A stretch of 64,000 nt of DNA from Perna viridis (taxonomy: Eukaryota): assembly GCA_037379345.1 (NCBI GenBank), contig CM074516.1, positions 48,583,626-48,647,625 on the forward strand, written 5' to 3'. The notes under the pieces were generated by a model. The model saw only the letters and a list, made by a program, of their open reading frames with translations, had not been told where the DNA came from and made no database searches. Position 1 is the stretch's first letter. Each line of letters begins with the position of its first letter. A program made the translations under genes and the position numbers. Of the stretch, positions 2,298 through 59,903 are shown piece after piece.

Positions 2298-2404
2298 ATT
2301 CCTGATGAGCAGCGGAGAAGTAGTTCAGATCGTCTGGGTGTACCAGGTCATATCCAGACTTCGTGGCAAGTTCTCGGTCTGAGAATCCAAACATCATCTT
2401 CCCT
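2298..2404 (-). CDS. AHR: AHR coding exon 8 (PAS-B)
   Basis: 107 nt, acceptor TTTAACAG, donor GTAAGT. Translates GKMMFGFSDRELATKSGYDLVHPDDLNYFSAAHQE. Confidence 0.96.
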
Positions 2405-2436
2405 CTGTTAAATTAAGAAAACCGTCAGGACAATTT

Positions 2437-2597
2437 TAAACAGGACATCTACACTAGTTAAACAGAACATCTACACTAGTTAAACAGGACATCTACACTA
2501 GTTATACAGGACATCTACACTAGTTAAACAGGACATCTACACTAGTTAAACAGGACATCTACACTAGTTAAACAGGACATCTACACTAGTTAAACAG
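2437..2597. repeat. Minisatellite, 22-bp unit TAAACAGGACATCTACACTAGT x7.3
   Basis: Near-perfect tandem copies read directly, ~30 bp from the exon 8 acceptor. Confidence 0.95.
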
Positions 2598-8100: not shown

Positions 8101-8586
8101 CATAAGTGGCAGGTCAGGGTCACCAGAAGTGTCACTCATGTGAAAAAAAGAGGATTTTTTGCAATTTTTTACTACATATAGGTATATAACAGGAAGTGGT
8201 TAGTATAAGAGATTGACACTGTAGGAGAGACATCATTCTCTTATAGGGAAATAAAGGTATATGGATCAATTTTGCTGTGGAAAGAGGCTGAGAAATGAGC
8301 CCTGCTCCTGGCCACTGTTACATATAACCTCTTGTTCAGCTCTCAAGTCTGTATTTTTTATCAAACTCTGTATTAGATAATCTTATTTTAAAGCACATTC
8401 ACTCTGCTTGCAGATGAAATCATATTGTGGTTCCCTAAGCTACAAATAATATTGCCAGGACCCCATAATAAAAAAAACTGCCCAGATCGTATATATATGT
8501 GGTCACTACATGGTATGGGTTAAAATTATTATTAGGGTTTTTTAAATTGTTTAACACACCTTTAAATAGCAAATTTGCCGAGCAGT

Positions 8587-8746
8587 GCTTACCTATTATC
8601 CATTGACATAGGAGAGAAGCTTACCAATTATCCATTGACATAGGAGAGAAGCTTACCTATTATTCATTGACATAGGAGAGAAGCTTACCTATTATTCATT
8701 GACATAGGAGAGAAGCTTACCTATTATCCATTGACATAGGAGAGAA
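8587..8746 (-). repeat. Tandem repeat, 32-bp unit x5, spanning the AHR exon 7/intron 7 boundary
   Basis: Plus-strand unit GCTTACCTATTATCCATTGACATAGGAGAGAA at 8587, 8619, 8651, 8683 and 8715; each unit is the last 26 nt of exon 7 plus GTAAGC. Confidence 0.97.
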
Positions 8747-8911
8747 GTCCATTTTATGCTTAGATTTGAATGTCAGCTCTCTGGACGGGAGATCAAGTAA
8801 GGACAGTGGACCAAATGGACAACATGTGGCAAACAGACCCATCTGTGGTTCCTCAGATTGTCGTGGACCTGAACTGTGAAGTAGTCGAATCCAACCATTG
8901 ATTTCTAATGT
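8721..8911 (-). CDS. AHR: AHR coding exon 7 (end of PAS-A, start of PAS-B)
   Basis: 191 nt, acceptor TTTCATAG, proximal donor AG|GTAAGC at 8720. Translates TLEINGWIRLLHSSGPRQSEEPQMGLFATCCPFGPLSLLDLPSRELTFKSKHKMDFSPMSMDN(R). Confidence 0.95.
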
Positions 8912-9184: not shown

Positions 9185-9258
9185 AATGAATCCTGACGTG
9201 TTATCCAGAAGACATCTGAATCGTACTGTGAAAGACCTGTGTAGGTAATGGTAATTCT
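9185..9258 (-). CDS. AHR: AHR coding exon 6 (PAS-A)
   Basis: 74 nt, acceptor TTCCAG, donor GTAAGT. Translates ENYHYLHRSFTVRFRCLLDNTSGFI. Confidence 0.96.
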
Positions 9259-9668
9259 CTGGAATAGACCATTGGAATCATTACTTCACTACAAATCATA
9301 ACTCTATATTTAAGGACTATTTATTATTTTTGACGGAGTTATTCAATTAAACTGACTTAAGACCTAGTAATACTTTGTAAACTGCAAAGAGATTTAAGAA
9401 CAAGCATTGATTGCCAAGCTTAGTCAAAAGTTATATACAATCCTTATAATCTAATTTTAAATGGATTCCAGTATTTATTATAAATTGATCAAAATATTAC
9501 TGAGTTCAAGATTATCTGTATCCTGGATTGTGAACTAATTGAAGTTAAAGATGTATAAGTAACAAATTAGTTTATACAAAATAACCTACGCTGTCTACAA
9601 AAAAAAACAACAACACAAAAACATACAAATCAACCAATCTAAAGAATTATAGCAATTAACTCATACAA

Positions 9669-9866
9669 CCAATGAGGGTCAGTTATGGCATTTGGACTGA
9701 TGAGGGTCAGTTATGGCATTTGGACCAATGAGGGTCAGTTATGGGGTTTGGACCAATAAGGGTCAGTTATGGGGTTTGGACCAATGAGGGTCAGTTATGG
9801 GATTAAGACCGATGAAGGTCATTTATGGGATTTGGACCAATGAGGGTCAGTTATGGGATCTGGACC
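9669..9866. repeat. Minisatellite, 28-bp unit CCAATGAGGGTCAGTTATGGGGTTTGGA x~7
   Basis: Tandem copies read directly in intron 5. Confidence 0.92.
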
Positions 9867-10007: not shown

Positions 10008-10143
10008 CTGGCATCATAATCTCATGTAGTGTCATGCTAGATTTTTCCTGAGGCAGAGTTGAGTTCCATGTCAACTGTTTCTTAAATTCTTCCCGGTCTT
10101 CAGAGTGAATTAGTTCCATCACACTTTGATGTATAATATCAGA
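10008..10143 (-). CDS. AHR: AHR coding exon 5 (PAS-A)
   Basis: 136 nt, acceptor TTTCAG, donor CAG|GTAGGA. Translates SDIIHQSVMELIHSEDREEFKKQLTWNSTLPQEKSSMTLHEIMMP. Confidence 0.96.
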
Positions 10144-11633
10144 CTGAAATAAAGAAAAAACAAAGACTTCAACATTCAGCATACAGATAATCAGATTTCT
10201 CTGGTTATAGATAATTATGAATGTATATATTTACTGCAGAATAGAAATGACCCTGGTTAAAACGGGTTCTTCTGATTTATACCGCATGGCTTATTTTTTT
10301 TTTTGCAGTTGCAAATTTTAATGATTTAGAAGTGAAAAAGGAATAAGAAAATTTTAGTGTTTCTTTTTTGGGGCGGATGCTAAGTGGTGCAATAAGTTCT
10401 TAAGGCCCCAAAAAACTATTTTGTGGAATTTTTTAGCAGTTTTAGATAAACATGTACCACTAAGTAAGCGAAACTTAGCACCCCATGGAAATTACTTGTA
10501 ATACTGTATAACATGGTGTTCATGTGGCCAAGTCAATCATTATTCCATATTATACTCCTTACAATATAACAATCTACATACTGTATAAATAGAAGTATAG
10601 AAGATCACACATTTTTTTTTCTGTTGATTTTCATTTCCTACAATCGGTAGTCTACTAGTACCATTATAAACTTCTTCCCAAGTACAAATAAATAACAGTT
10701 TTTTTGAAGTCTCATTTAATTCTAATCACTGGATAAAATGATTCTTTAATTTAAGGTTCAGTTCTGATGTTTAAGTTCATCAAATAATTATAAGTCAGGC
10801 TATGAATGTCACATAACTCTCTAGTTTTATTAAAAAACCTAGAGAACGACCTGCTCGTCTTTCTCAAACGACAATGATGGTGTAATTGTATCCTTGGAGT
10901 TTAATCATGTTGTAGGTCGAAATTATGCCATCTTAAAGTTTGAAGGGTCAATCAATCAGGGAATCATAAAATAAAGCAGAACTACCACCACTAACAGGAG
11001 ATAGCACTAAGGGGAGATAATTAACGTCAGAGACTTAGTAGTAATCCAACTTTACTCAAAACAAAATCCCTCTAATACCTCTAATTAATTACTATGCTTA
11101 ACTTAAAATCAATGAACAACTTTCTGTTTTCTTAAATGATTTCTAGATCTTTAGGAGACAGGAACAAAGAATGAAGATCTCCGCGATGCAACTTCTTTCT
11201 CCGTCAATTATGCTATAAATAGCTTTAAAACAACAGTAATTATTGCATTAAAGTATATTAAGTTCGGCAATTAAGTTGAAATTGACTCTACAATGTATTA
11301 CGTCTCAATCAAGTTATTCAGCAGGCGGAAGCACGGCGACTTGTATTCTCTCCAATACTACCATCAAGGGTACTATTAACAATTTTACGCTCTGAGATCA
11401 CAGAATTAATGGGATTTAGCCTTCAGATGCTTTACACATCTTTTAAGGAAGAAATCAACTTTATGGTCCCTCTGCCTTCATTGCATCATTATAATTTACT
11501 GTCGGTATGGAAAAGACTAAATCAAACACAACATTGTCTCAATGTTCTGCCCATTTGTCGACAGATAGAGTATATATAGTTGTGCCAGGATTTAATCAAC
11601 TATTAGAATTTGTAGGAGTATGTCTCCATTTCT

Positions 11634-17396: not shown

Positions 17397-18165
17397 CAAA
17401 ATAGGGACTTGTGACACAAGAACAAAATAAGGGACGGTGAAACAGCCTGGTGAACATGAACAAATAAAAGATGGCAATATAGCCTAGTGAACATCAACAA
17501 AATAAAAGACAGCGAAACAGCCTGGTGAACAAGAACAAAATAAGGGAGGGCCATACAGCTTTGGGTGAACAAGAACAAAATAAGGGATGGTGATACTGCC
17601 TGGTGAGCAAGGACAAAATAAGGGACGACAATATAGCCTAGTGAACATGAACAAAATAAAAGACAGTCTTACAGCCTGGTGACACAAGAACAAAATAAGG
17701 GACAGGGATACAGCCTGGTGACACAAGAACAAAATAAGGAATGGGGATACAGCCTGGTGACACAAGAACAAAATAAGGGACGGCAATACAGCTTCGGGTG
17801 AACAAGAACAAAATAAGGGACAGAGATACAGCCTGGTGAAAAAGAACAAAATAAGGGACAGAGATACAGCCTGGTGAACAAGAACAAAATAAGGGATGGT
17901 GATACAACCTGGTGAACAAGAACAAAATAAGGGATGGTGATACAGCCTGGTAAACAAGGGCAAAATAAGGGATGGTGATACAACCTGGTGAACAGAAACA
18001 AAATAAGGGATGGTGATACAGCTTCAGGTGAAAAAGAACAAAATAAGGGACGGGATACAGCTTCGGGTGAACAAGGACAAAATAAGGGACAGTGATACAG
18101 CCTGGTGAAGAACAACAAAATAAGGAATGGTGACACAGCCTGGTGAACAAGGATAAAATAAGGCC
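17397..18165. repeat. Minisatellite, ~38-41-bp unit GAACAAGAACAAAATAAGGGAYGGTGATACAGCCTGGT x~19
   Basis: Tandem copies with small indels; this array explains the overlapping spurious minus-strand ORFs. Confidence 0.95.
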
Positions 18166-18204
18166 TGATGAGATAATGAAGAAATATCAGAAATATATAG
18201 TCCT

Positions 18205-18320
18205 GGTAAGACAAGTTTAAAATAGGGCTGATAAGACAAGATTAAAATAGGGCTGATAAGACAAGTTTAAAATAGGGCTGATAAGACAAGTTTAAAATAG
18301 AGGGTGTTAAGACAAGAACA
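18205..18320. repeat. Minisatellite, 25-bp unit TAAGACAAGTTTAAAATAGGGCTGA x~4
   Basis: Read directly; adjacent to and loosely similar to the preceding array. Confidence 0.9.
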
Positions 18321-24392: not shown

Positions 24393-25515
24393 TCTCACAT
24401 TATGATCTTAGATAAATTCTTGTTTATTGAAAATGTTTTTTTTTCTATTCTGAACATTTAATATAACTTTAATGATCAAACCAATGAAAGTATTTAGAAA
24501 ATTTAGAAACATCTGAAATCAAGTGTAGAAATATTAATTCTAAAATAACAACAAATTAAGTTGACATAAGGTCATTAAATCTTCATTACAGATTTCATGA
24601 AAACTGTAACTTCAATATAATAATAAACTAAAACAAATATACTCAGAATATCACAGCAGAAAACAGAGCTGGAAGGTAATAATTCTATGGAATACACAGA
24701 AATTCAACAATGTTTTAATTATATTAAATAAAAATCACCATCTGTTTTTTTATTTGCTTCAGGAAGCAATGTGTTAATCAGGCAAGGATTATTACTAATT
24801 AATTTCTTTTCCAATAAAAATATTTCATTTCCTAGAAAAAGTAAATCTTGACTTCTGTCTCTTTATAAAGGTAACAAGTATAATTTAGACTAATCACATT
24901 GAACCGACACATGTTAAAGTCATACTGCAATTCATGTACAACATTCAATGTATTTTCCACCGACTCTTGAATGCAACAATCCGATTTAGGAATTATAACG
25001 GTAAATTGATAAAGGATATAACCGTTTCTAATCCAAGTTAATATTGAATGATGACAAAAAAGGATGTTTAGGATCGAGAGGTTGGTCGAGCCGGTTAATA
25101 ATCGTTCTTTCATGTCTTCTAACTACTGTAAGCCTGGCAGTATAAAAGACTTTAAACCTAATTATTTAAACACAATCAACATTCAACAGAACTTCTATAC
25201 ATTGGCAGTTGGCCTCAAGGTGAAATATGCAAATTTCATTAATGGACATTTTTATTCCTTCAACATATATTATTCTGAAGTTACACTGCAGGGTATATTG
25301 GGTATCTTCAGGAGCTAATCAAGATTATTCTAGTCAAGCACTTTTTACTACATTGTATTAGGTCTTCATAATAATGAATTTCCAAAATATTAGGTTTACT
25401 GATTCTTGGCTTGCCATCCAGTGGAACTACAAAAATGTAACATGGAAATTTATTTCACTGTGACTTTCAAAAATAACTTCTAAAATAAACTGATACTGAC
25501 CAAAAAAGTGACCAC

Positions 25516-25930
25516 CAAGATAAACAATTCTGTTGATGGTGAATCATTGCTAACCAAGATAAACCATTACGTTGATGGTGATATTGCTAACCAAGATAAA
25601 TCATTATGTTGATGATGAATCATTGCTAACCAAGATAAATCATTCTGTTGATGAATCATGGCTAACCAAGATAAACCATTCTGTTGATGGTGAATCATTG
25701 CTAACCAAGATAAACCATTCTGTTGATGGTGAATCATTGCTAACCACGATAAACCATTCTGTTGATGGTGACATTGCTAACCAAGATAAACAATTCTGTT
25801 GATGGTGAATCATTGCTAACCAAGATAAACCATTCTGTTGATGGAGAATCATTGCTAACCACGATAAACCATTCTGTTGATGGTGAATCATTGCTAACCA
25901 AGATAAACCATTCTGTTGATGGTGAATCAT
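25516..25930. repeat. Minisatellite, 39-bp unit CCAAGATAAACCATTCTGTTGATGGTGAATCATTGCTAA x~11
   Basis: Read directly; unit length is a multiple of 3, producing spurious repetitive ORFs. Confidence 0.96.
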
Positions 25931-28656
25931 TTCAATCTCTGGAGACAACAAATTGTCTGAATTTTTTAAATTCTAATAGATAGTTTTGTTAAAAAACACA
26001 CTGACCCATGGAATAAACAATAGTGATTGAGATCTAGACTGAAATGATTGACTCACACCCTATATCATTGGTGTGGTCTATCTGATGAAAACTTAGAAAA
26101 AAATACCTCTTACATTTACAGGTACATTTAAACTTGACTTCAATCTAAAAGGTTTACAAATCAAATCATTTCTTCTCTCTGCCTATTTCAAGTTTAAAAA
26201 AGAAAATAAACTCTGAAATTTCCTGGATTATTTTTGTTTTGTAGTTATAATAAAGGGGAAAGCACTTTGATCTAGAGGTCTATATTTTGTGGTCTAACTA
26301 CTTTCTGTAAGTTCAACCCATTTCAAACAACCAAATTACCCCAATAAACTTATCAATAAGATATTAACAATTCAAAAAATTTTAGTATTGTACAATAGTT
26401 ATGATTATAAATACAGATATCTGACTATAGAATACACAGAACTGAGAAACATAACCTTACCATGAATGTTACTGTATACTGTGTTTAAATATGACAGAAA
26501 AACACAACATGAAACAAAATCTGTCAATGATGTCACCATCACCTGTATAATGTTTCCTTCAAGGAAGATTTAAGGAGACATTGACAAAGACAACACCTAC
26601 GTTGGTAGAAAACTGTCGCTGAACTAGTAAACCAATGAGGAAATGTTATTGTACATACTTTATGTAATACAGAACTAATTTTTTTCAGAACTGTGTTCCA
26701 ACTAATTTTGCAGACTGATAACCTTTAACCTTTTCATGAAACTGCATATGAATAACCCTAAAGCTAAGGACCAGTATTATAACAAAGCAAAAAACTTTAA
26801 TAATAATTTGTATTTCAACCATCCAATACTTCCCCTTTATCTGACTAAGACACTAAGCCAGTATATGGAGCTTTAACCTAGACAATGTTTCTTCAGAACT
26901 TAACAGTGGTATTTACTTCCTGTCGGATATGAAGTGTCTTTAGAAGACAGATATAAATAATAATCAGGACGTAACAAACCCACATCTCTCTGAATATTGG
27001 GTACCACCCAAATAATAGCCCAACCATCGTACTTTCAATATTCATCGGAAATAATTAACAGTTGTTCTGATTTTGAATAGCCTACATGATGGAAAGAGAG
27101 AGTTACTTGGAGTTTTTAATGTCCTGCACAAGTTAATACACACAATTAATTCAAGCGCTTAGTGTAATTTTATCCCACTTGCAAAGTTCCCTGCCATTTT
27201 TGAATAATGGCATCTTTTAGGTTATCAATGTGATATGACAGTATGCCGGATGCTTACAGAGAAATATTTTGTACAATTTCCGTAACTTTGGAATCACATC
27301 AGAGTCGTCATAATTAGCAAACCCTATGGAATTATGGGTAATAAAAGCTTTTATCATCATTATTTTACCTGAGAAAATTGATTTTTAAGGTTTTCAGTAA
27401 TGAATGGAAATTGTCCTCATGCTGAGTACAAGTCAACAACTGGAGAGAAAACATTTTATCAAAATAATAATTTATATTCAAAAATTGTTCTTAATATAAT
27501 AAAAAAAATGATATCGTTAACATGCCCATAAATGATTACAAACATTAATACCTTTCTGAGACAGACAGACCATGTTCTTTTGTAAGAACTAAAACATTGA
27601 GTCATTGTAAAGGTCAAGGTCAAGAGCATGTACCCTTAACACCTTCTGCTAGACATGTTTTTTTCTCAGTTGAATGGATTATGTTAGCTCAGTTAAAAAT
27701 TCTTATCTTGTACCTATAGTAACATATTCCCATAATTTCAATAGAAACTCATTGTCATCTATTTTGCTGTTAAAGGATTTACAGCCTTTGAAAATACTAC
27801 CAGCAGAAAGAAATGATTAATCATGACAAAAATACAACAATGCTAGCAATTTAGTAATCACCAAATTTCTGAGACCAACTCAAGCAAAAGTTATGTAACA
27901 CCTGAAAATTATCATAAAATCAACAAATATTTACTAAATAATTCATTTCCGACTTTTCTTTTTTAAAATGAAATATCATTTACCAATCAGTTTTTCTTTT
28001 CAACAGAGTAAAGTTTCCAAATCAGATTACAAAACTATGCCAAACCTACAAATTGTAATGTTATCAAACAAAAACACAATTAAAAACCCATGATACAAAA
28101 ATCATTTTAATTTCTTTTTATTGGTGGGGATTTTTTTTTTTTGTACTGCGGAAGTCCTGTGAAGTCTGTGTTTGAACTGACAGTTGTAACAATAATTATA
28201 TTGTAGTACAAATCGATGTATAATAGTAAATAAAGTGCTCCTCACTTGACAAGGATGATTTCCTCATTAAAACCAACTCAATTTAAATAAATTGTATTTA
28301 TGCAAATAATAGTTAGGATTGTCAGTGTTTTGCAGAATATCGATCACACAACTATAACACAATGTACATTTCTACCTCCATTTGATTTTAGGAACAGAAA
28401 TGTTAAAATAGTGATAAAAACGAGGAAATATAAAGAGAAATGACATGATTTACAGAACCAGCTCTCAATTAAGTTAATAGAGAATTTAATGTATAAAATA
28501 AGGATTATCAGAAAGAAGAACAATTACTAAAAAAATCTTTCAGTCAAACCAGTGAGATACCATCTATCTTACCCCCCCCCCCCCCCAAAAAAAAAAAATA
28601 AAAAATAAATCTGTGAGCCAATTCCGAATTGTGATGCACCAAAACCAAACTAGATA

Positions 28657-29331: not shown

Positions 29332-30425
29332 AGGAGGGTTATACTAGCTGTTCCCATGAAACAGTAAAGAGGATGATAATACTAGCTGTTACATTGGAGC
29401 AGTAGGAAGGATGATTATATTAGCTGTTCTCATGGAGCAGTACGGAGGATGATTATATTAGCTGTTCTCATGGAGCAGTACGGAGGATAATTATACTAGC
29501 TGTTCCTATGGAGCAGTACGGAGGATGAATATACTAGCTGTTCCTATGGAGCAGTACGGAGGATGATTATACTAGCTGTTCTCATGGAGCAGTACGGAGG
29601 ATGATTATATTAGCTGTTCTCATGGAGCAGTACGGAGGATGACTATACTAGCTGTTCCTATGGAGCAGTACGGAGGATGAATATACTAGCTGTTCCCTTG
29701 GAGCAGTACGGAGGATGATTATACTAGCTGTTCCCTTGGAGCAGTACGGAGGATGATTATACTAGCTGTTCCTATGGAGCAGTACGAAGGATGATTATAC
29801 TAGCTGTTCCTATGGAGCAGTACGGAGGATGATTATACTAGCTGTTCTCAAGGAGCAGTACGGAGGATGATTATACTAGCTGTTCCTATGGAGCAGTACG
29901 GAGGATGAATATACTAGCTGTTCCCTTGGAGCAGTACGGAGGATGATTATACTAGCTGTTCCCTTGGAGCAGTACGGAGGATGATTATACTAGCTGTTCC
30001 TATGGAGCAGTACGAAGGATAATTATACTAGCTGTTCTCATGGAGCAGTACGGAGGATGATTATACTAGCTGTTCCCTTGAAGCAGTACGGAGGATGATT
30101 ATACTAGCTGTTCTCATGGAGCAGTACGGAGGATGATTATACTAGCTGTTCTCATGGAGCAGTACGGAGGATGATTATACTAGCTGTTCCCTTGGAGCAG
30201 TACGGAGGATGATTATACTAGCTGTTCCTATGGAGCAGTAGGGAGGATGATAATACTAGCTGTTACCTTGGAGCAGTAGAGAGGATGATTATACTAGCTG
30301 TTCTCATGGAGCAGTAGGGAGGATAATACTAGCTGTTCCCTTGGAGTTGTAGGGAGGATGATTATACTAGCTGTTACCTTGGAGCAGTAAAGAGGATGAT
30401 AATACTAGCTGTTACCTTGGAGCAG
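29332..30425. repeat. Minisatellite, 38-bp unit GGAGGATGATTATACTAGCTGTTCCTATGGAGCAGTAC x~29
   Basis: Homogeneous central copies and more diverged edge copies. Confidence 0.97.
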
Positions 30426-33400: not shown

Positions 33401-33528
33401 CTCTTCAAAAACAAATTATTAGAATACCCCTATTTGTTTTTCTTTAGTTGTTGTACAACATATGAATATTGCAGCATAACTATAAACAATGTGTAATATA
33501 GAACAATAACACGACTTCATACGCTTAC

Positions 33529-33716
33529 CTTGGAAATAAGCTTTAGTCCTAAGAAAACTGACAGCTAGTCTTAGTATAGATAGTTTATCTAACTTGGATA
33601 TCACACTTTGTTCAAATGGTAATAGACTTGCTAAATGATCAAGTTCAGAATTAAGTCTTTCTCTATGACGTTTACTGGGGTTACTCTTTGGAGGGTCTTT
33701 GGATGGAGCTTTTACA
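33529..33716 (-). CDS. AHR: AHR coding exon 2 (bHLH domain)
   Basis: 188 nt, acceptor TTTACAG, donor G|GTAAGC. Translates [62 protein letters not shown]. Confidence 0.98.
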
Positions 33717-34494
33717 CTGTAAATAGAAAATTAAATTAATACTATGGGCAGTATACATTTACTGGTTCAGATAAACATGACAGTTGATTTCCACTTTGTT
33801 GGAAAATGTAAAAAATTCAATTTATTTAGCCTTTAATTTACAAAAACATTGCTGGTGACCCTTTTTTATTCAATGATGTTAAGGTTTTGCCCTATAAACA
33901 GTAAGTAGGTACTTCCCCAAATCTGAGATGGTCCACCTCCAAATATAATATCAGAAACCATTCCTGTATATGATGTTTACAGAAAAATCCTAAGTTAAGC
34001 ATGGTTATGGTTATACAATAATTATGTATTGTAATATCTAATAATTGTTATCCTCCATCAAATTAGAGAGCAGGAACATTAAAACATTGTAACAAATGTC
34101 CCAAATGTTCACACATTTCTGAACAATATGACCATAAATGACTCCTTCACTAAAGAGCTCTTCAATCTCAAGTGCTATACCAACATTGCAAGGATTTGTT
34201 TAACAAAAGAGAACTTGAGAGGGGTGACAGACCACTTGAGAACTGTCAGAGAGTTTCTCTACAACGATCTGTATAACTACTTCATTATGGATAATACAGC
34301 ACACAGAATATTTACGTTGGCTTTTTAAAGATTATCAGATGTTCGGCTTACAATTCATATTTTCTACCATTGCCTACTTACCTAAAACAGATTTCATTTG
34401 GATTGCAAATTTGTGAATATTAAGTAGACACTGCTACCTTAATGGACTGGCCACTTCAATCATTTTTTGAAGTAAAAACAACTAGCATGTATAG

Positions 34495-50681: not shown

Positions 50682-50746
50682 CTTTTGACAGTTCGCCTCC
50701 TGCGCTTCGTGGCATACATAGTTTTTATGACCCAATCGTCAACCAT
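50682..50746 (-). CDS. AHR: AHR coding exon 1 (MVDDWVIKTMYATKRRRRTVK; basic region/NLS)
   Basis: ATG at 50746 is immediately preceded by an in-frame TGA. 65 nt, donor AG|GTAAGC, phase 2 matches exon 2. YATKRRRR corresponds to the AHR N-terminal basic motif (vertebrate YASRKRRK). Confidence 0.93.
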
Positions 50747-55252: not shown

Positions 55253-57370
55253 ACACCAGGTATGTGGACACATATTCCTTCACAAGGTATGTGGACTCAG
55301 ATGCCCCCACCACCAGGTAAGTGGACAGATACCCCAAGGTATGTGAACACAGATGCCCCATCAGGTAGGTGGATATATATGCTCCTACCAGGTATGCAAA
55401 CAATGATGCACCCACCAAGTAGGTGGAAATGGATGCTCCCACCAGGTATATGGACAGGGATGCCCTACCAGGTATGTGGACAGCAATGCCCCACAAAGTA
55501 TATGGACAGGGATGCCCCACAAGGTATATGGACAGGGATGCTCCCATCAGGTATTTGGACAGGGAAGCCCCCAACAGGTATGTGATCAGGGATGCTCACA
55601 CCAGGTATATGGACAGGGATGCCCCACCAAGCATATGGACAAGGATGTCCCCACCAGGTATATAGACAGGGATGTCCCCATCAGGTATATGGACAGGGAT
55701 GTCCCCACCAGGTATGTGGACAGGAATGTCCCCACCAGGTATATGGACAGGGATGCCCCCACCAGGTATATGGATAGGGATGCCCCCATCAAGTATGTGG
55801 ACAGGAATGTCTCCACCAGGTACATGGACAGGGATGCCCCATCAGGTATATGGATAGGGATACCCCAACCAGGTATGTGGACAGGAATGCCCCCACCAGG
55901 TATGTGAACAGGGATGCCCCCATCAAGTATGTGGACAGGAATGTCCCTCCAGGTACATGGACAGGAATGTCCCCACCAGGTACATGGACAGGGATGCCCC
56001 ATCAGGTATATGGACAGGGATGCCCCAACCAGGTATGTGGATAAGGATGCCCCACCAGGTATGTGGACAGAAATGTCCCCACCAGGTATATGGACAGGGA
56101 TGTCCCCATCAGGTATATGGACTGGGATGCCCCAACCAGGTATATGGACAGGGATGCTCAACCAGGTATGTGGACAGGAATGTCCCCACCAGGTACATGG
56201 ACAGGAATGTCCCCACCAGGTACATGGACAGGGATGCCCCATCAGGTATATGGACAGGGATGCCCCAACCAGGTATGTGGATAAGGATGCCCCATCAGGT
56301 ATGTGGACAGGAATGTCCCCACAAGGTATATGGACAGGGATGTCCCCATCAGGTATATGGCCAGGGATGCCCAACCAGGTATATGGACAGGGATGCCCCA
56401 ACCAGGTATGTGGACAGGAATGTCCCCATCAGGTATATGGACAGGGATGCCCCAACCAGGTATGTGGATAGGGGATGCCCCCACCAGGCAAGTGGACAGG
56501 AATGTCCCCACCAGGTATATGGACAGGGATGTCCCCATCAGGTATATGGACTGGGATGCCCCAACCAGGTATGTGGATAGGGATGCCCCACTAGGTATGT
56601 GGACAGGAATGTCCCCACCAGGTATATGGACAGGGATGCCCCATCAGGTATATGAACAGGGATGCCCCAACCAGGTATGTGGATAGGGGATGCCCCCACC
56701 AGGTATGTGGACAGGAATGTCCCCACCAGGTATATGGATAGGAATGTCCCCATCAGGTATATGGATAGGGATGCCCCAACCAGGTATATGGACAGGGATG
56801 CCCCAACCAGGTATGTGGACAGGAATGTCCCCACCAGGTACATGGACAGGAATGTCCCCACCAGGTACATGGACAGGGATGCCCCATCAGGTATATGGCC
56901 AGGGATGCCCCAACCAGGTATGTGGATAGGGATGCCCCACTAGGTATGTGGACAGGAATGTCTCCACCAGGTATATGGACAGGGATGTCCCATCAGGTAT
57001 ATGGACAGGGATGCCCCAACCAGGTATGTGGATAGGGGATGCCCCCACCAGGTATGTGGACAGGAATGTCCCCACCAGGTATGTGGACAGGGTTGTCCTC
57101 ATCAGATATATGGCCAGGGATGCCCCAACCAGGTATGTGGATAGGGATGCCCCATCAGGTATATGGACAGGGATGCCCCAGTAGATATATGGACAGGAAT
57201 GTCCTCATCAGGTATATGGACAGGGATGTCCCCATCAGGTATGTGGACAGGGATGTCCCCACCAGTTATATGGAGAAGGGTGCCCCACCAGGTATGTGGA
57301 CAAGGATGTCCCCACCAGGTATATGGACAGAGATGTCCCCAGCAGGTATATGGACAGGGATACTCCCACC
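55253..57370. repeat. Large GC-rich minisatellite, ~26-28-bp unit CCAGGTATRTGGACAGGRATGYCCCCA x~75-80
   Basis: Read directly; degenerate left edge and local 240-bp higher-order period (55981-56040 is identical to 56221-56280). Source of ~25 spurious ORFs. Confidence 0.97.
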
Positions 57371-58090: not shown

Positions 58091-58865
58091 TGAGAGGCAG
58101 TTTTATCAACTGTCAGAAAGTTCAGTGAAGTAACAATCTTAGCACCAGTGAGTTAAACATCCTGAGCTTCTCTAGAAACACTGATACTGTTAAATCATAG
58201 AGTGACTTCAGCAGAGCAAAATAAAGAACCTAATTGCACCAATAGTTAGATGAAAGCTTCCCTGATGTGTACAAATTATTTCCCATATGTTTGAATGATA
58301 TAAAACTGAACAGTCATGACACTAAAATATCAAAGTGACACCAATTGTATATTTACCAAGCAAACATATTCAAATAGAAACTAAAAGCCAAACACAGCTA
58401 AGTTGTAAGGAGGGAGAAATAAAATTGTCCATTCTTTGAACAAAATGAAACTGTTATGTAGATAATACACCTTTAAAGGAAGAAGATATCATCAAGATCT
58501 CATCAATCAATTAGGTCAGTTTTTTTTGTAAATTTATAGATCTCATGTAATAACACTGGTACAGTGGGAAAAATAAAATATCACTTTATGTGATGAAATT
58601 ATCAAAACATTTTTGAAGATAATACTTTCAATGAAAGTGAGTAAACAAAACTATGAATAAATGAAAATAAACTTTTCTGAAAAAAAACTTTCCAAAATGA
58701 ATATAGGATAAAGAGATATTTTTATTTCTATATAATAATGATAGTAATGAAGCCCTTTAATGGAATATTCTAATTCAGTTTGGGAATGTATATCTTTAAG
58801 CTTGATGGTTTAAAAAAATCAAGAAAGTTAGGTCATAAAAATACTATTAAAATAAAGAGTAATAT

Positions 58866-59903
58866 GTTGTTGTACTGGGTATACCCCACCACTTGTTGTT
58901 GTACTGGGTATACCCCACCATTTGTTGTTGTACTATGTATACCTCCTACATGTTGTACTAGGTATACCCCACTTGTTTTTGTACTAGGTATCACCCCACT
59001 TGTTGTTGTACAAGGTATACCCCACTTCTTGTTGTACTAGGTATAACATCACATGTTGTTGTACTAGGTATACCCCCACTTGTTGTTGTACTAGGTATCA
59101 CCCCACATGTTGTACTAGGAATACCCCCACTTCTTGCTGTACTAGGTATACCCCACTTCTTGTTGTACTAGGTATACCCCACCATGTTGTTGTACTAGGA
59201 ATACCCCACCACATGTTGTAATATGTATACCCCACTTCTTGTTGAACTAGGTATACCTCCACTTGTTATACTAGGTATACCCCCACATCTTGTACTAGGT
59301 GTACCCCACCACTTGTTGTACTAGGTATACCCCACATGTTGTACTAGGTGTACCCCACTTCTTAATGTACTAGGTATACCTCCACAAGTTGTACTAGGTA
59401 CACCCCCACTTGTTGTTGAACTAGGTATACCCCCACATGTTGTTGTACTACGTATACCCCACATGTTGTACTAGGTATACCCCCACATGTTGTTGTACTA
59501 GGTATACCCCCACATGTTGTACTAGGTATACCCCAACTTGATGTACTAGGTATACCTCCACATGTTGTACTAGGTATACCTCCACATGTTGTACTAGGTA
59601 TACCCCACTTCTTGTTGTACTAGGTATACCTCCACATGTTGTACTAGGTATACCCCAACACTTGTTGTTGAACTAGGTATACCCCCACTTGTTGTTGTAC
59701 TAGGTATACCCCCACATGTTGTACTAGGTATACCACACCACTTGTTGTTGAACTAGGTATACTCCCACATGTTGTTGTATTAGGTATACCCCCACTTGTT
59801 GTACTAGGTATACCCCCACTTTTTGTAGTACTATATACACCCCCACATATTGTTGTACTAGGTACACCCCTACATGTTATTGTACTAGGTATACCCCACT
59901 TGT
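58866..59903. repeat. Minisatellite, ~23-28-bp unit (TTG)nTACTAGGTATACCCCCACAT x~40
   Basis: Read directly; unit length varies through the TTG and C runs. Confidence 0.96.

What the first reader, a model, noticed from the sequence alone, without database searches (positions are those of the whole stretch)
8587..8746. AHR exon 7 splice donor amplified five times, with an in-frame stop: possible switch to a bHLH/PAS-A-only product
Seen: the last 26 coding nt of exon 7 plus GTAAGC form a 32-bp unit repeated five times, giving donor GTs at 8720, 8688, 8656, 8624 and 8592 (minus strand). The proximal and most distal units are identical, four of five keep AG|GTAAGC, and unique intron sequence resumes only after the distal copy. 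Reading past the first donor gives AGG TAA, so any distal donor, or intron retention, ends the protein at 283 aa. Established: that removes most of PAS-B and the transactivation region, leaving the bHLH plus PAS-A core; vertebrate AHRR also lacks PAS-B and represses AHR signalling, and a stop this far upstream of later junctions is a classical NMD substrate. Inference: copy number of this VNTR could tune full-length AHR dose or produce a dominant-negative form. It could also be neutral if the first donor always wins.
Basis: partly seen in the sequence, partly recalled or inferred. Interest (0 to 1): 0.75.

Follow-up and report, generated by a model that had tools for sequence, protein, structure and literature searches.

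The report
Silent repeated splice donors in AHR
The end of one exon of a mollusc's AHR gene, with its splice signal, is copied five times in a row into the intron, but the assembled RNA shows only the first copy in use, as in a known kind of repeat, so it looks tolerated.

Summary
A 32-bp unit (the last 26 nt of exon 7 plus GTAAGC) stands five times head to tail at 8587-8746 on the minus strand. This gives donors at 8720, 8688, 8656, 8624 and 8592. Reading past the first donor gives AGG TAA, so the protein would end at 283 aa.

The gene is the invertebrate AHR/spineless orthologue. Its closest named relatives are molluscan.

In 3 of 3 transcriptome-like runs from three studies, one long spliced contig joins exons 5, 6 and 7, leaves the genome exactly at 8721 and continues with the first 30 letters of exon 8 (acceptor 2404). 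No contig uses a distal donor. The few contigs on units 2-5 run on unspliced into unique intron. An independent DNA run also holds unit-to-unit junctions, so the array is not an artefact of this assembly. Only the assembly gives the number five.

This is a known kind of repeat: a minisatellite whose first unit spans an exon-intron boundary (human F7, CBS, IFI6, LMNB2; lancelet 'mirages'). There the most upstream donor normally wins. The scan has already noted many such arrays elsewhere in this genome.

Low-level use of distal donors, hidden by NMD, is not excluded. Copy-number variation was not tested.

The parts
8587..8746 (-). Array of five 32-bp units, each made of 26 exonic nt plus GTAAGC (TRF reports 8587-8747 because one base, C, is shared with the flank)
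8721..8911 (-). Exon 7 of the AHR-like gene (191 nt). Its last 26 nt (8746-8721) are the exonic part of unit 1.
   Evidence: Contig pieces 8721-8911 in X11, X13 and X17, with the joint 8911/9185; homology to P0004 and P0005
8719..8720 (-). Donor 1 (TAG|GTAAGC), the donor used in the assembled mRNA
   Evidence: Loose end at 8721 in 3 of 3 RNA-like runs; its 30 letters are the reverse complement of exon 8 from 2404
8717..8719 (-). TAA stop met in frame, straight after AGG, if donor 1 is not used
8687..8688 (-). Donor copy 2 (TAG|GTAAGC); its unit carries G>A at unit position 19
   Evidence: no use seen
8655..8656 (-). Donor copy 3 (TAG|GTAAGC); its unit is identical to unit 2
   Evidence: no use seen
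8623..8624 (-). Donor copy 4, weakened (TTG|GTAAGC)
8591..8592 (-). Donor copy 5 (TAG|GTAAGC); its unit is identical to unit 1 and is followed by unique intron
   Evidence: low-depth contigs of X11 (8502-8652) and X13 (8502-8616) run through it unspliced
2298..2404 (-). Exon 8 (start of the PAS_3 match), with acceptor ttaacag| before 2404. The 2404 end is shown by RNA; the 2298 end is inferred from homology and GT.
9185..9258 (-). Exon 6
   Evidence: Joints 8911/9185 and 9258/10008 in 3 of 3 RNA-like runs
10008..10143 (-). Exon 5. The contig piece reaches 10147 because 4 letters fit both sides of the joint.

Best explanation
This is a young exon-boundary minisatellite (a 'mirage', of the F7 intron 7 type). 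A 32-bp piece made of the last 26 nt of AHR exon 7 and the first 6 nt of intron 7 was duplicated in tandem, probably by replication slippage or unequal exchange in a genome rich in minisatellites. The extra copies lie inside the intron. The spliceosome uses the most upstream donor, so copies 2-5 are removed with the intron and the normal full-length AHR mRNA is made. The array is therefore tolerated and has no shown function. Shown here: the array itself, the use of the first donor in the assembled mRNA, and unit-to-unit junctions in independent samples. Inferred: how the array arose, why the first donor wins (by analogy with F7), and neutrality.
For: Array anatomy.

First donor used: in X11, X13 and X17 (three studies) one contig each, of 4321, 4788 and 4293 nt, has pieces 10008-10147, 9185-9258 and 8721-8911. 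The skipped parts end CT..AC on the + strand, which is GT..AG on the gene's strand. Each contig has a loose end at 8721 that reads exon 8 from 2404. That is 3 of 3 RNA-like runs laid.

The resulting junction ...MDNR|GKMMFGF matches the relatives ...MDSR|GRMVFGY (P0004) and ...MDNR|GKAMFAY (P0005).

The only contigs of the RNA-like runs on units 2-5 are short, and the tool gives them low depth figures: X11 8502-8652, X13 8502-8616 and X13 8683-8744. Two of the three continue into unique intron, as unspliced RNA or DNA would. X17 has none.

An independent DNA run, X3, holds contigs that cross unit boundaries (8634-8694, 8686-8726, 8698-8744) and the exit junction (8393-8616).

Background: 17 minisatellite arrays cover 12.5% of this window.

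Four of 4 short read-through ORFs from relatives (81-89% identical in exon 7) show no second unit after the donor, so the array looks specific to this lineage.

Precedent: in F7, five to nine identical donors exist, only the most upstream is used, and the others become active only when those upstream are mutated (PMC1557585; abstract, introduction, results section 6 and discussion read). Lancelet 'mirages' do not disturb regular splicing (PMC3087553, passages).
Against: Contigs show the main form only and drop rare variants, and 5 loose ends were not listed. Products of distal donors carry a stop right after the first donor and would probably be removed by NMD, so steady-state RNA under-reports them. 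According to the introduction of PMC1557585, the two pseudo-sites nearest the authentic donor are also used in IFI6 and CBS. The copies here are strong donors identical to the real one in 3 of 4 cases. The tissues and conditions of the runs are unknown. Neutrality is an inference, since neither copy number in other animals nor expression per allele was measured. The RNA fold gives no reason why donor 1 should be favoured (z = 0.12).
Confidence: 0.8

Rival explanations
1. Unproductive-splicing dial. A fraction of pre-mRNAs is spliced from donors 2-5, meets the TAA and is destroyed by NMD. More copies would then mean less full-length AHR mRNA.
For: All distal donors give an immediate stop. Three of four copies are identical to the used donor. 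In IFI6 and CBS the nearest pseudo-sites are used (PMC1557585 introduction). The CBS 31-bp array, written c.1444_1467+7(16_21), is built the same way (PMC2630376 passages). A paper whose title I saw only in that reference list (Lievers 2001) links it to reduced CBS activity. Contigs cannot show rare or degraded forms.
Against: No contig and no listed loose end shows a distal donor in 3 of 3 RNA-like runs. Contigs on units 2-5 run on into unique intron, so they look like unspliced background. In F7, identical pseudo-sites are not used even at low level.
Confidence: 0.12
2. Switch to a truncated 283-aa bHLH/PAS-A protein that acts as a dominant-negative AHR, as vertebrate AHRR does.
For: The truncated frame would keep the bHLH exon and PAS-A and lose the exons that match PAS_3. 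The bHLH exon matches AHRR and AHR about equally well.
Against: No such transcript was seen. The message would have a stop followed by at least three further exon junctions, a usual NMD substrate (established knowledge). Nothing points to regulation of donor choice. Four of 4 relatives' read-through ORFs lack the array, so it is not a conserved device.
Confidence: 0.03
3. Assembly artefact: the real genome has one copy, or a quite different number.
For: Only the assembly gives the number five. The contigs laid break inside the array, so they cannot count copies. The lancelet globin paper notes a mirage that was wrongly assembled in a draft genome (PMC3087553, legend of a supplementary file seen in passages).
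Against: Pieces crossing unit-to-unit boundaries occur in DNA run X3 and in X11 and X13, from three studies other than the likely source. Such junctions cannot exist in a single-copy allele. The locus is single in the 723-Mb assembly.
Confidence: 0.04

Closest known systems
Human F7 intron 7 minisatellite (37 bp, 5-9 copies; PMC1557585)
   Same: The first unit spans the exon 7/intron 7 boundary, so the authentic donor is followed by identical pseudo-donors. Only the most upstream one is used in normal RNA. The number of copies is similar.
   Different: The F7 unit holds 4 exonic and 33 intronic nt; here it holds 26 and 6. The F7 donor is weak (TGG|GTGGGT) and this one is strong (TAG|GTAAGC). 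F7 polymorphism and pseudo-site competence were shown by experiment; neither was tested here. F7 is a vertebrate gene, this one molluscan.
Human CBS 31-bp VNTR, c.1444_1467+7(16_21) (PMC2630376 passages; PMC1557585 introduction)
   Same: Almost the same build: 24 exonic plus 7 intronic nt per unit, against 26 plus 6 here.
   Different: CBS has 16-21 copies. Two pseudo-sites are reported as used, and a link to lower enzyme activity is claimed (title seen in a reference list only). Here there are five copies and no use of pseudo-sites was seen.
Lancelet 'mirages' (Adh3 and globin genes; PMC3087553 passages)
   Same: Minisatellite-like tandem duplications of exon-intron boundaries in an invertebrate. 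Regular splicing is not disturbed, and length varies between haplotypes.
   Different: Units are 10-160 bp and both donor and acceptor sides are affected. Haplotype variation was shown there and not tested here.
Other donor-anchored arrays in this same genome
   Same: According to those notes, they show the same build: exon end plus donor repeated into the intron, with the first donor in use.
   Different: They lie in other genes, with other unit lengths and copy numbers. I did not re-examine any of them.
Vertebrate AHRR
   Same: A bHLH/PAS-A protein without a working PAS-B would resemble AHRR in domain content. The window's bHLH exon matches AHRR at E 2.1e-22.
   Different: AHRR is a separate gene with its own repression region. 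Here no transcript for a truncated form was seen.

Membership tests
Exon-boundary minisatellite ('mirage', F7 intron 7 type) | Head-to-tail array of three or more near-identical units | tested here: met
   5.0 copies, period 32, 96% matches; 0-2 differences between units
Exon-boundary minisatellite ('mirage', F7 intron 7 type) | The first unit spans an authentic exon-intron boundary, shown by RNA | tested here: met
   Spliced contigs end at 8721 and continue with exon 8 in 3 of 3 RNA-like runs. Unit 1 is 8746-8715.
Exon-boundary minisatellite ('mirage', F7 intron 7 type) | The splice-site sequence is reiterated in the intron | tested here: met
   TAG|GTAAGC four times and TTG|GTAAGC once
Exon-boundary minisatellite ('mirage', F7 intron 7 type) | Downstream pseudo-sites silent, most upstream donor used | tested here: met
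   Met for the assembled main mRNA in 3 of 3 runs. Rare use cannot be judged from contigs.
Exon-boundary minisatellite ('mirage', F7 intron 7 type) | Copy number varies between individuals | tested here: inconclusive
   X3 holds unit junctions, but contigs cannot count copies. One piece (8686-8726) has one other letter at a place the tool did not list. The metagenome scan found nothing.
AHR/spineless subfamily of bHLH-PAS factors | N-terminal bHLH closest to AHR rather than to other bHLH-PAS proteins | tested here: met
   Pfam HLH 5.4e-07. The top 8 of 20 PDB matches are AHRR/AHR at E 2.1e-22 to 7.9e-21; the next is BMAL1 at 4e-08.
AHR/spineless subfamily of bHLH-PAS factors | PAS-B closest to AHR/spineless | tested here: met
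   PAS_3 matches on exon 8 (2.3e-07) and exon 9 (8.7e-06). Exon 9's best PDB match is 'Ahr homolog spineless' at 9.1e-19, then AHR at 2.2e-14, then CLOCK at 4.2e-07.
AHR/spineless subfamily of bHLH-PAS factors | Orthology shown by a tree; ligand and ARNT binding | not tested
   No tree was built. The closest full-length proteins are molluscan. Sources name some cluster mates 'Aryl hydrocarbon receptor, partial' and one 'single-minded homolog 1-like'.
AHRR-like truncated repressor isoform | A transcript whose frame ends before PAS-B is present | tested here: not met
   No contig uses a distal donor in 3 of 3 runs. The pieces on units 2-5 are short and unspliced. Rare forms are not excluded.
Regulated unproductive splicing (alternative splicing coupled to NMD) | An alternative donor is used and yields a premature stop; the product rises when NMD is blocked | not testable with these tools
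   The stop is there. Use of distal donors and the response to an NMD block need raw reads or bench work.

The most novel reading that the evidence does not exclude
The five-donor array is a copy-number-variable decoy. A share of AHR pre-mRNA is spliced from donors 2-5 and destroyed by NMD, so that array length sets the dose of this xenobiotic-sensing receptor in different animals. More broadly, donor-anchored arrays, which earlier notes of this scan report as recurrent in this bivalve genome, would arise by a process tied to the 5' splice site itself and not by chance placement.
Probability: 0.08. Interest if true: 0.55.

Novelty: new member of a known kind. Interest (0 to 1): 0.2.

Why it matters
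As it stands, it matters little. It is one more example of a repeat type described in human genes since the 1990s-2000s and in lancelets, here in a mollusc AHR gene, and the normal message is made.

It is useful in three ways. It is a caution for gene annotation and variant calling, because five identical donors with an immediate stop invite false 'truncated isoform' models. It is a natural test, outside mammals, of the rule that the most upstream of several identical 5' splice sites wins. And it is a possible length marker in a gene used in pollution biology.

If copy number did change AHR dose, it would give a simple genetic handle on differences in receptor level between animals. Nothing here shows that.

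Tried and rejected
1. My first exon 3 acceptor (12404/12403) gave 274 aa. I rejected it once the chiton protein P0151 showed nine more conserved residues. The acceptor before 12430 gives 283 aa.

2. I asked whether an RNA structure could hide donors 2-5. The fold of 8540-8800 (minus strand) is no better than shuffles: z = 0.12, and 106 of 200 shuffles fold as well. This idea is dropped.

3. I asked whether the 22-bp x 7.4 array at 2436-2597, which ends 31 nt before the exon 8 acceptor, is a matching 'mirage' of that acceptor. Its best local alignment scores 14, and 477 of 2000 shuffles do as well. There is no evidence for it.

4. I looked for a second copy or paralogous array in the genome. 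The 501-nt query gave one place, the window itself.

5. I looked for other animals' alleles in metagenome contigs.

6. Notes of this scan near this place: none.

7. Papers with 'aryl hydrocarbon receptor' + 'minisatellite' + 'splice': 0. This one search is my only basis for saying I found this array nowhere in print.

8. I give the depth figures of X3 pieces (161 for 8634-8694, and 95 and 104 for pieces over the unit 1/2 boundary, against 58-67 for flanking single-copy contigs) only as a hint of several copies. The tool itself says depth is no copy number.

The span of 6.2-6.3 kb exceeds the 6,000-letter limit, so I used the loose-end letters instead of a joint.

10. I searched no joined spliced model. 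Searches went exon by exon or used database proteins as they came.

The alignments of lancelet mirages (additional files of PMC3087553) and any F7 supplements were not seen.

Full report
**What is there.** On the minus strand, the sequence reads ...AAGCATAAAATGGAC, then five head-to-tail copies of a 32-nt unit, then unique sequence. Tandem Repeats Finder reports one array at 8587-8747: period 32, 5.0 copies, 96% matches, no indels, score 301. Cut in register, the units are 8746-8715, 8714-8683, 8682-8651, 8650-8619 and 8618-8587.
- Units 1 and 5 are identical, and units 2 and 3 are identical (one G>A at unit position 19).
- Unit 4 has one A>T that turns AG|GT into TG|GT.
- The next 32 nt differ from every unit at 25-26 of 32 places.

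**The gene.** Open frames on the minus strand carry a bHLH-PAS gene.
- Pfam finds HLH on the frame at 33422-33730 (5.4e-07). It finds PAS_3 on the exon 8 frame (2.3e-07) and the exon 9 frame (8.7e-06). It finds nothing on the exon 7 frame or on the large last exon.
- Against solved structures, the top 8 of 20 matches to the bHLH exon are AHRR and AHR (E 2.1e-22 to 7.9e-21); the next is BMAL1 at 4e-08.
- Exon 9 matches 'Ahr homolog spineless' best (9.1e-19), then AHR (2.2e-14), then CLOCK (4.2e-07).
- A phmmer search with the 63 residues of exon 7 against 1.84 billion representatives gave 159 proteins at E up to 0.001. The best full-length ones are P0004 (791 aa, 79% identical) and P0005 (830 aa, 77%). 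These are records of a chiton and a freshwater snail. Cluster mates are named 'Aryl hydrocarbon receptor, partial' by some sources and 'single-minded homolog 1-like' by one.
- I take the gene for the mollusc AHR/spineless orthologue. I built no tree.

**Exon model and the 283-aa count.** I placed the exons by a local tblastn of P0004, P0005 and P0019 against the window, by GT-AG signals and by the chiton isoform P0151. They are:

| Exon | Coordinates (minus strand) |
|---|---|
| 1 | 50746-50682 |
| 2 | 33716-33529 |
| 3 | 12430-12327 |
| 4 | 11965-11876 |
| 5 | 10143-10008 |
| 6 | 9258-9185 |
| 7 | 8911-8721 |

The exon 1 peptide is identical to the first 21 residues of P0151. Together the exons make 848 nt with no in-frame stop. 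RNA confirms exons 5-7 and the start of exon 8. Exons 1-4 and the later exon ends rest on homology. I searched no joined spliced model; all searches were exon by exon.

**Which donor is used.** The look-up of sequencing runs listed 24 runs of the coded organism A and of invertebrate gut samples. I laid four of the 24 on window:8200-10300. Three are transcriptome-sized runs from three studies (X11, X13, X17) and one is a DNA run from a sample other than the best holder (X3). All are Logan contigs, so they show where contigs lie, not rare forms.
- In each of the three transcriptome-like runs, one long contig (4321, 4788 and 4293 nt) has pieces at 10008-10147, 9185-9258 and 8721-8911.
- Their joints skip 749 and 273 nt, and the skipped parts end CT..AC on the + strand. 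These are GT..AG introns of the minus-strand gene, which shows that the contigs come from spliced RNA. X3 has no such joint.
- Each of the three contigs has a loose end at 8721. Its 30 letters are the reverse complement of the window's minus strand from 2404 downwards, which is the start of exon 8 after ttaacag.
- So in 3 of 3 runs the assembled mRNA joins the first donor to acceptor 2404.
- The protein junction...MDNR|GKMMFGF, is the conserved one...MDSR|GRMVFGY in P0004 and ...MDNR|GKAMFAY in P0005.

**What lies on copies 2-5 in the RNA-like runs.** There are only three short pieces: X11 8502-8652, X13 8502-8616 and X13 8683-8744. The tool gives them depth figures of 2-3.3, against 55 and 63 for the mRNA contigs of the same runs. 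X17 has none.
- The first two run from inside the array straight into unique intron, through donor 5 without splicing. They look like unspliced RNA or traces of DNA. A similar short piece lies in unique intron at 8200-8256 in X11.
- No listed loose end falls at a distal donor, but the tool left 5 loose ends unlisted.
- The tool warns that contig depth cannot rank parts of a gene and that contigs drop rare variants. I therefore conclude only that the main mRNA uses donor 1 and that nothing seen points to distal donors.

**Is the array real?** In DNA run X3, pieces at 8634-8694, 8686-8726 and 8698-8744 cross unit-to-unit boundaries, and 8393-8616 covers the exit from unit 5 into unique intron. 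Such junctions (GTAAGC followed by the unit's start) cannot exist in a single-copy allele. X11 and X13 hold them too.
- Three studies other than the likely source sample therefore hold at least two units.
- The G>A variant of units 2 and 3 is also present in X3 (piece 8634-8694, no other letters).
- The number five is not independently checked. X3 gave no contig on exon 7 proper; the tool says a filter leaves holes that prove nothing.
- The locus is single in the 723-Mb, 46-contig assembly.

**Setting.** The window holds 17 separate arrays at TRF score 100 or more, 7,993 bases or 12.5% of it. That one of them touches an exon edge is not surprising in such DNA.
- The four short unnamed ORFs from relatives (P0001, P0002, P0003, P0006; 81-89% identical over exon 7) read through the donor into their introns. 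Their tails (LVRHL, WL, CVAKLVY..., LVLEKFQ...) show neither a TAA nor a second unit.
- In 4 of 4 relatives, then, the array is absent right after the donor, and it looks specific to this lineage. The near-identity of the units fits a recent origin.

**How it most likely works.** The extra donors are part of the intron and are removed with it. Why the first wins is inferred from the closest model. In human F7, a 37-bp minisatellite of five to nine units has its first unit across the exon 7/intron 7 boundary, and only the most upstream of the identical donors is used. Each pseudo-site becomes active only when all those upstream are destroyed. The authors propose a 5'-to-3' scanning choice (PMC1557585: abstract, introduction, results section 6 and discussion read).
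- Their introduction lists the same build in IFI6 (6-16), CBS, LMNB2 and PDGF. The two nearest pseudo-sites are used in IFI6 and CBS, and none in LMNB2 and PDGF.
- The CBS array is written c.1444_1467+7(16_21), that is 24 exonic plus 7 intronic nt (PMC2630376, passages). This is very close to the 26 plus 6 here.
- In lancelets such arrays are called 'mirages' and do not disturb regular splicing (PMC3087553, passages).
- I found no structural reason for the choice of donor 1: the RNA fold of the region is no better than shuffles (z = 0.12).

**What stays open.** Messages made from donors 2-5 would stop after codon 283, with at least three exon junctions downstream. They would probably be degraded, so steady-state contigs could hide a modest leak. 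The stable dominant-negative protein gets about 0.03.

**Earlier notes of this scan.** There are none at this place. By words and across the genome, however, many notes on other genes of the same genome describe exon end plus donor repeated into the intron with only the first donor in use. They file these under the same known kind. One note gave me the word 'mirage', which I then checked in a paper. Its claim that such arrays are about ten times commoner at donors than chance allows is untested here.

**Verdict.** The thing is a new member of a known kind of repeat, with the extra donors silent in the RNA that could be seen. One search for 'aryl hydrocarbon receptor' + 'minisatellite' + 'splice' found no paper. 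Interest is low, about 0.2.

Noticed in passing
window 2436-2597: A 22-bp x 7.4 array (97% matches) ends 31 nt upstream of the exon 8 acceptor, so intron 7 has a tandem array close to each of its ends. Its units end in TTTAACTAG, which resembles the real acceptor TTTAACAG. The similarity to the acceptor region is not above chance (477 of 2000 shuffles as good).
   Followed up: yes
whole window: 17 separate minisatellite arrays at TRF score 100 or more cover 7,993 bases, 12.5% of the window. Several lie in AHR introns (2724-2873, 9668-9866, 17411-18316, 25514-25931, 29332-30425).
   Followed up: partly
window 55254-57370 and 58865-59903: Two large arrays (27-bp units, about 79 and 40 copies, with higher-order periods of 80 and 107) lie upstream of AHR exon 1. 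The first unit contains CAGGTATGT on the + strand, a donor-like string. Their origin was not examined.
   Followed up: no
window 8385-8432: A short stretch in intron 7 is covered by many short contigs with loose ends on both sides, in all four runs. In DNA run X3 the depth figures reach 928. It is probably a high-copy dispersed repeat.
   Followed up: no
window 8686-8744 in run X3: Pieces over the unit 1/unit 2 boundary have depth figures of 95 and 104, against 58-67 for flanking single-copy contigs. One piece has one other letter at a place the tool did not list. This may hint at a different unit order or number in that animal, but contigs cannot settle it.
   Followed up: partly
window 10126 in run X11: There is a loose end at 10126, inside exon 5, in one run only. 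Its letters are unrelated to the window. It may be a short shared stretch with another contig (record 6) rather than an alternative splice. This is unexplained.
   Followed up: no
window 50682-50746: The exon 1 peptide (21 residues from the ATG, with the KRRRR motif) is identical to the N-terminus of the chiton AHR isoform P0151. This is unusually strong conservation for a first coding exon.
   Followed up: partly
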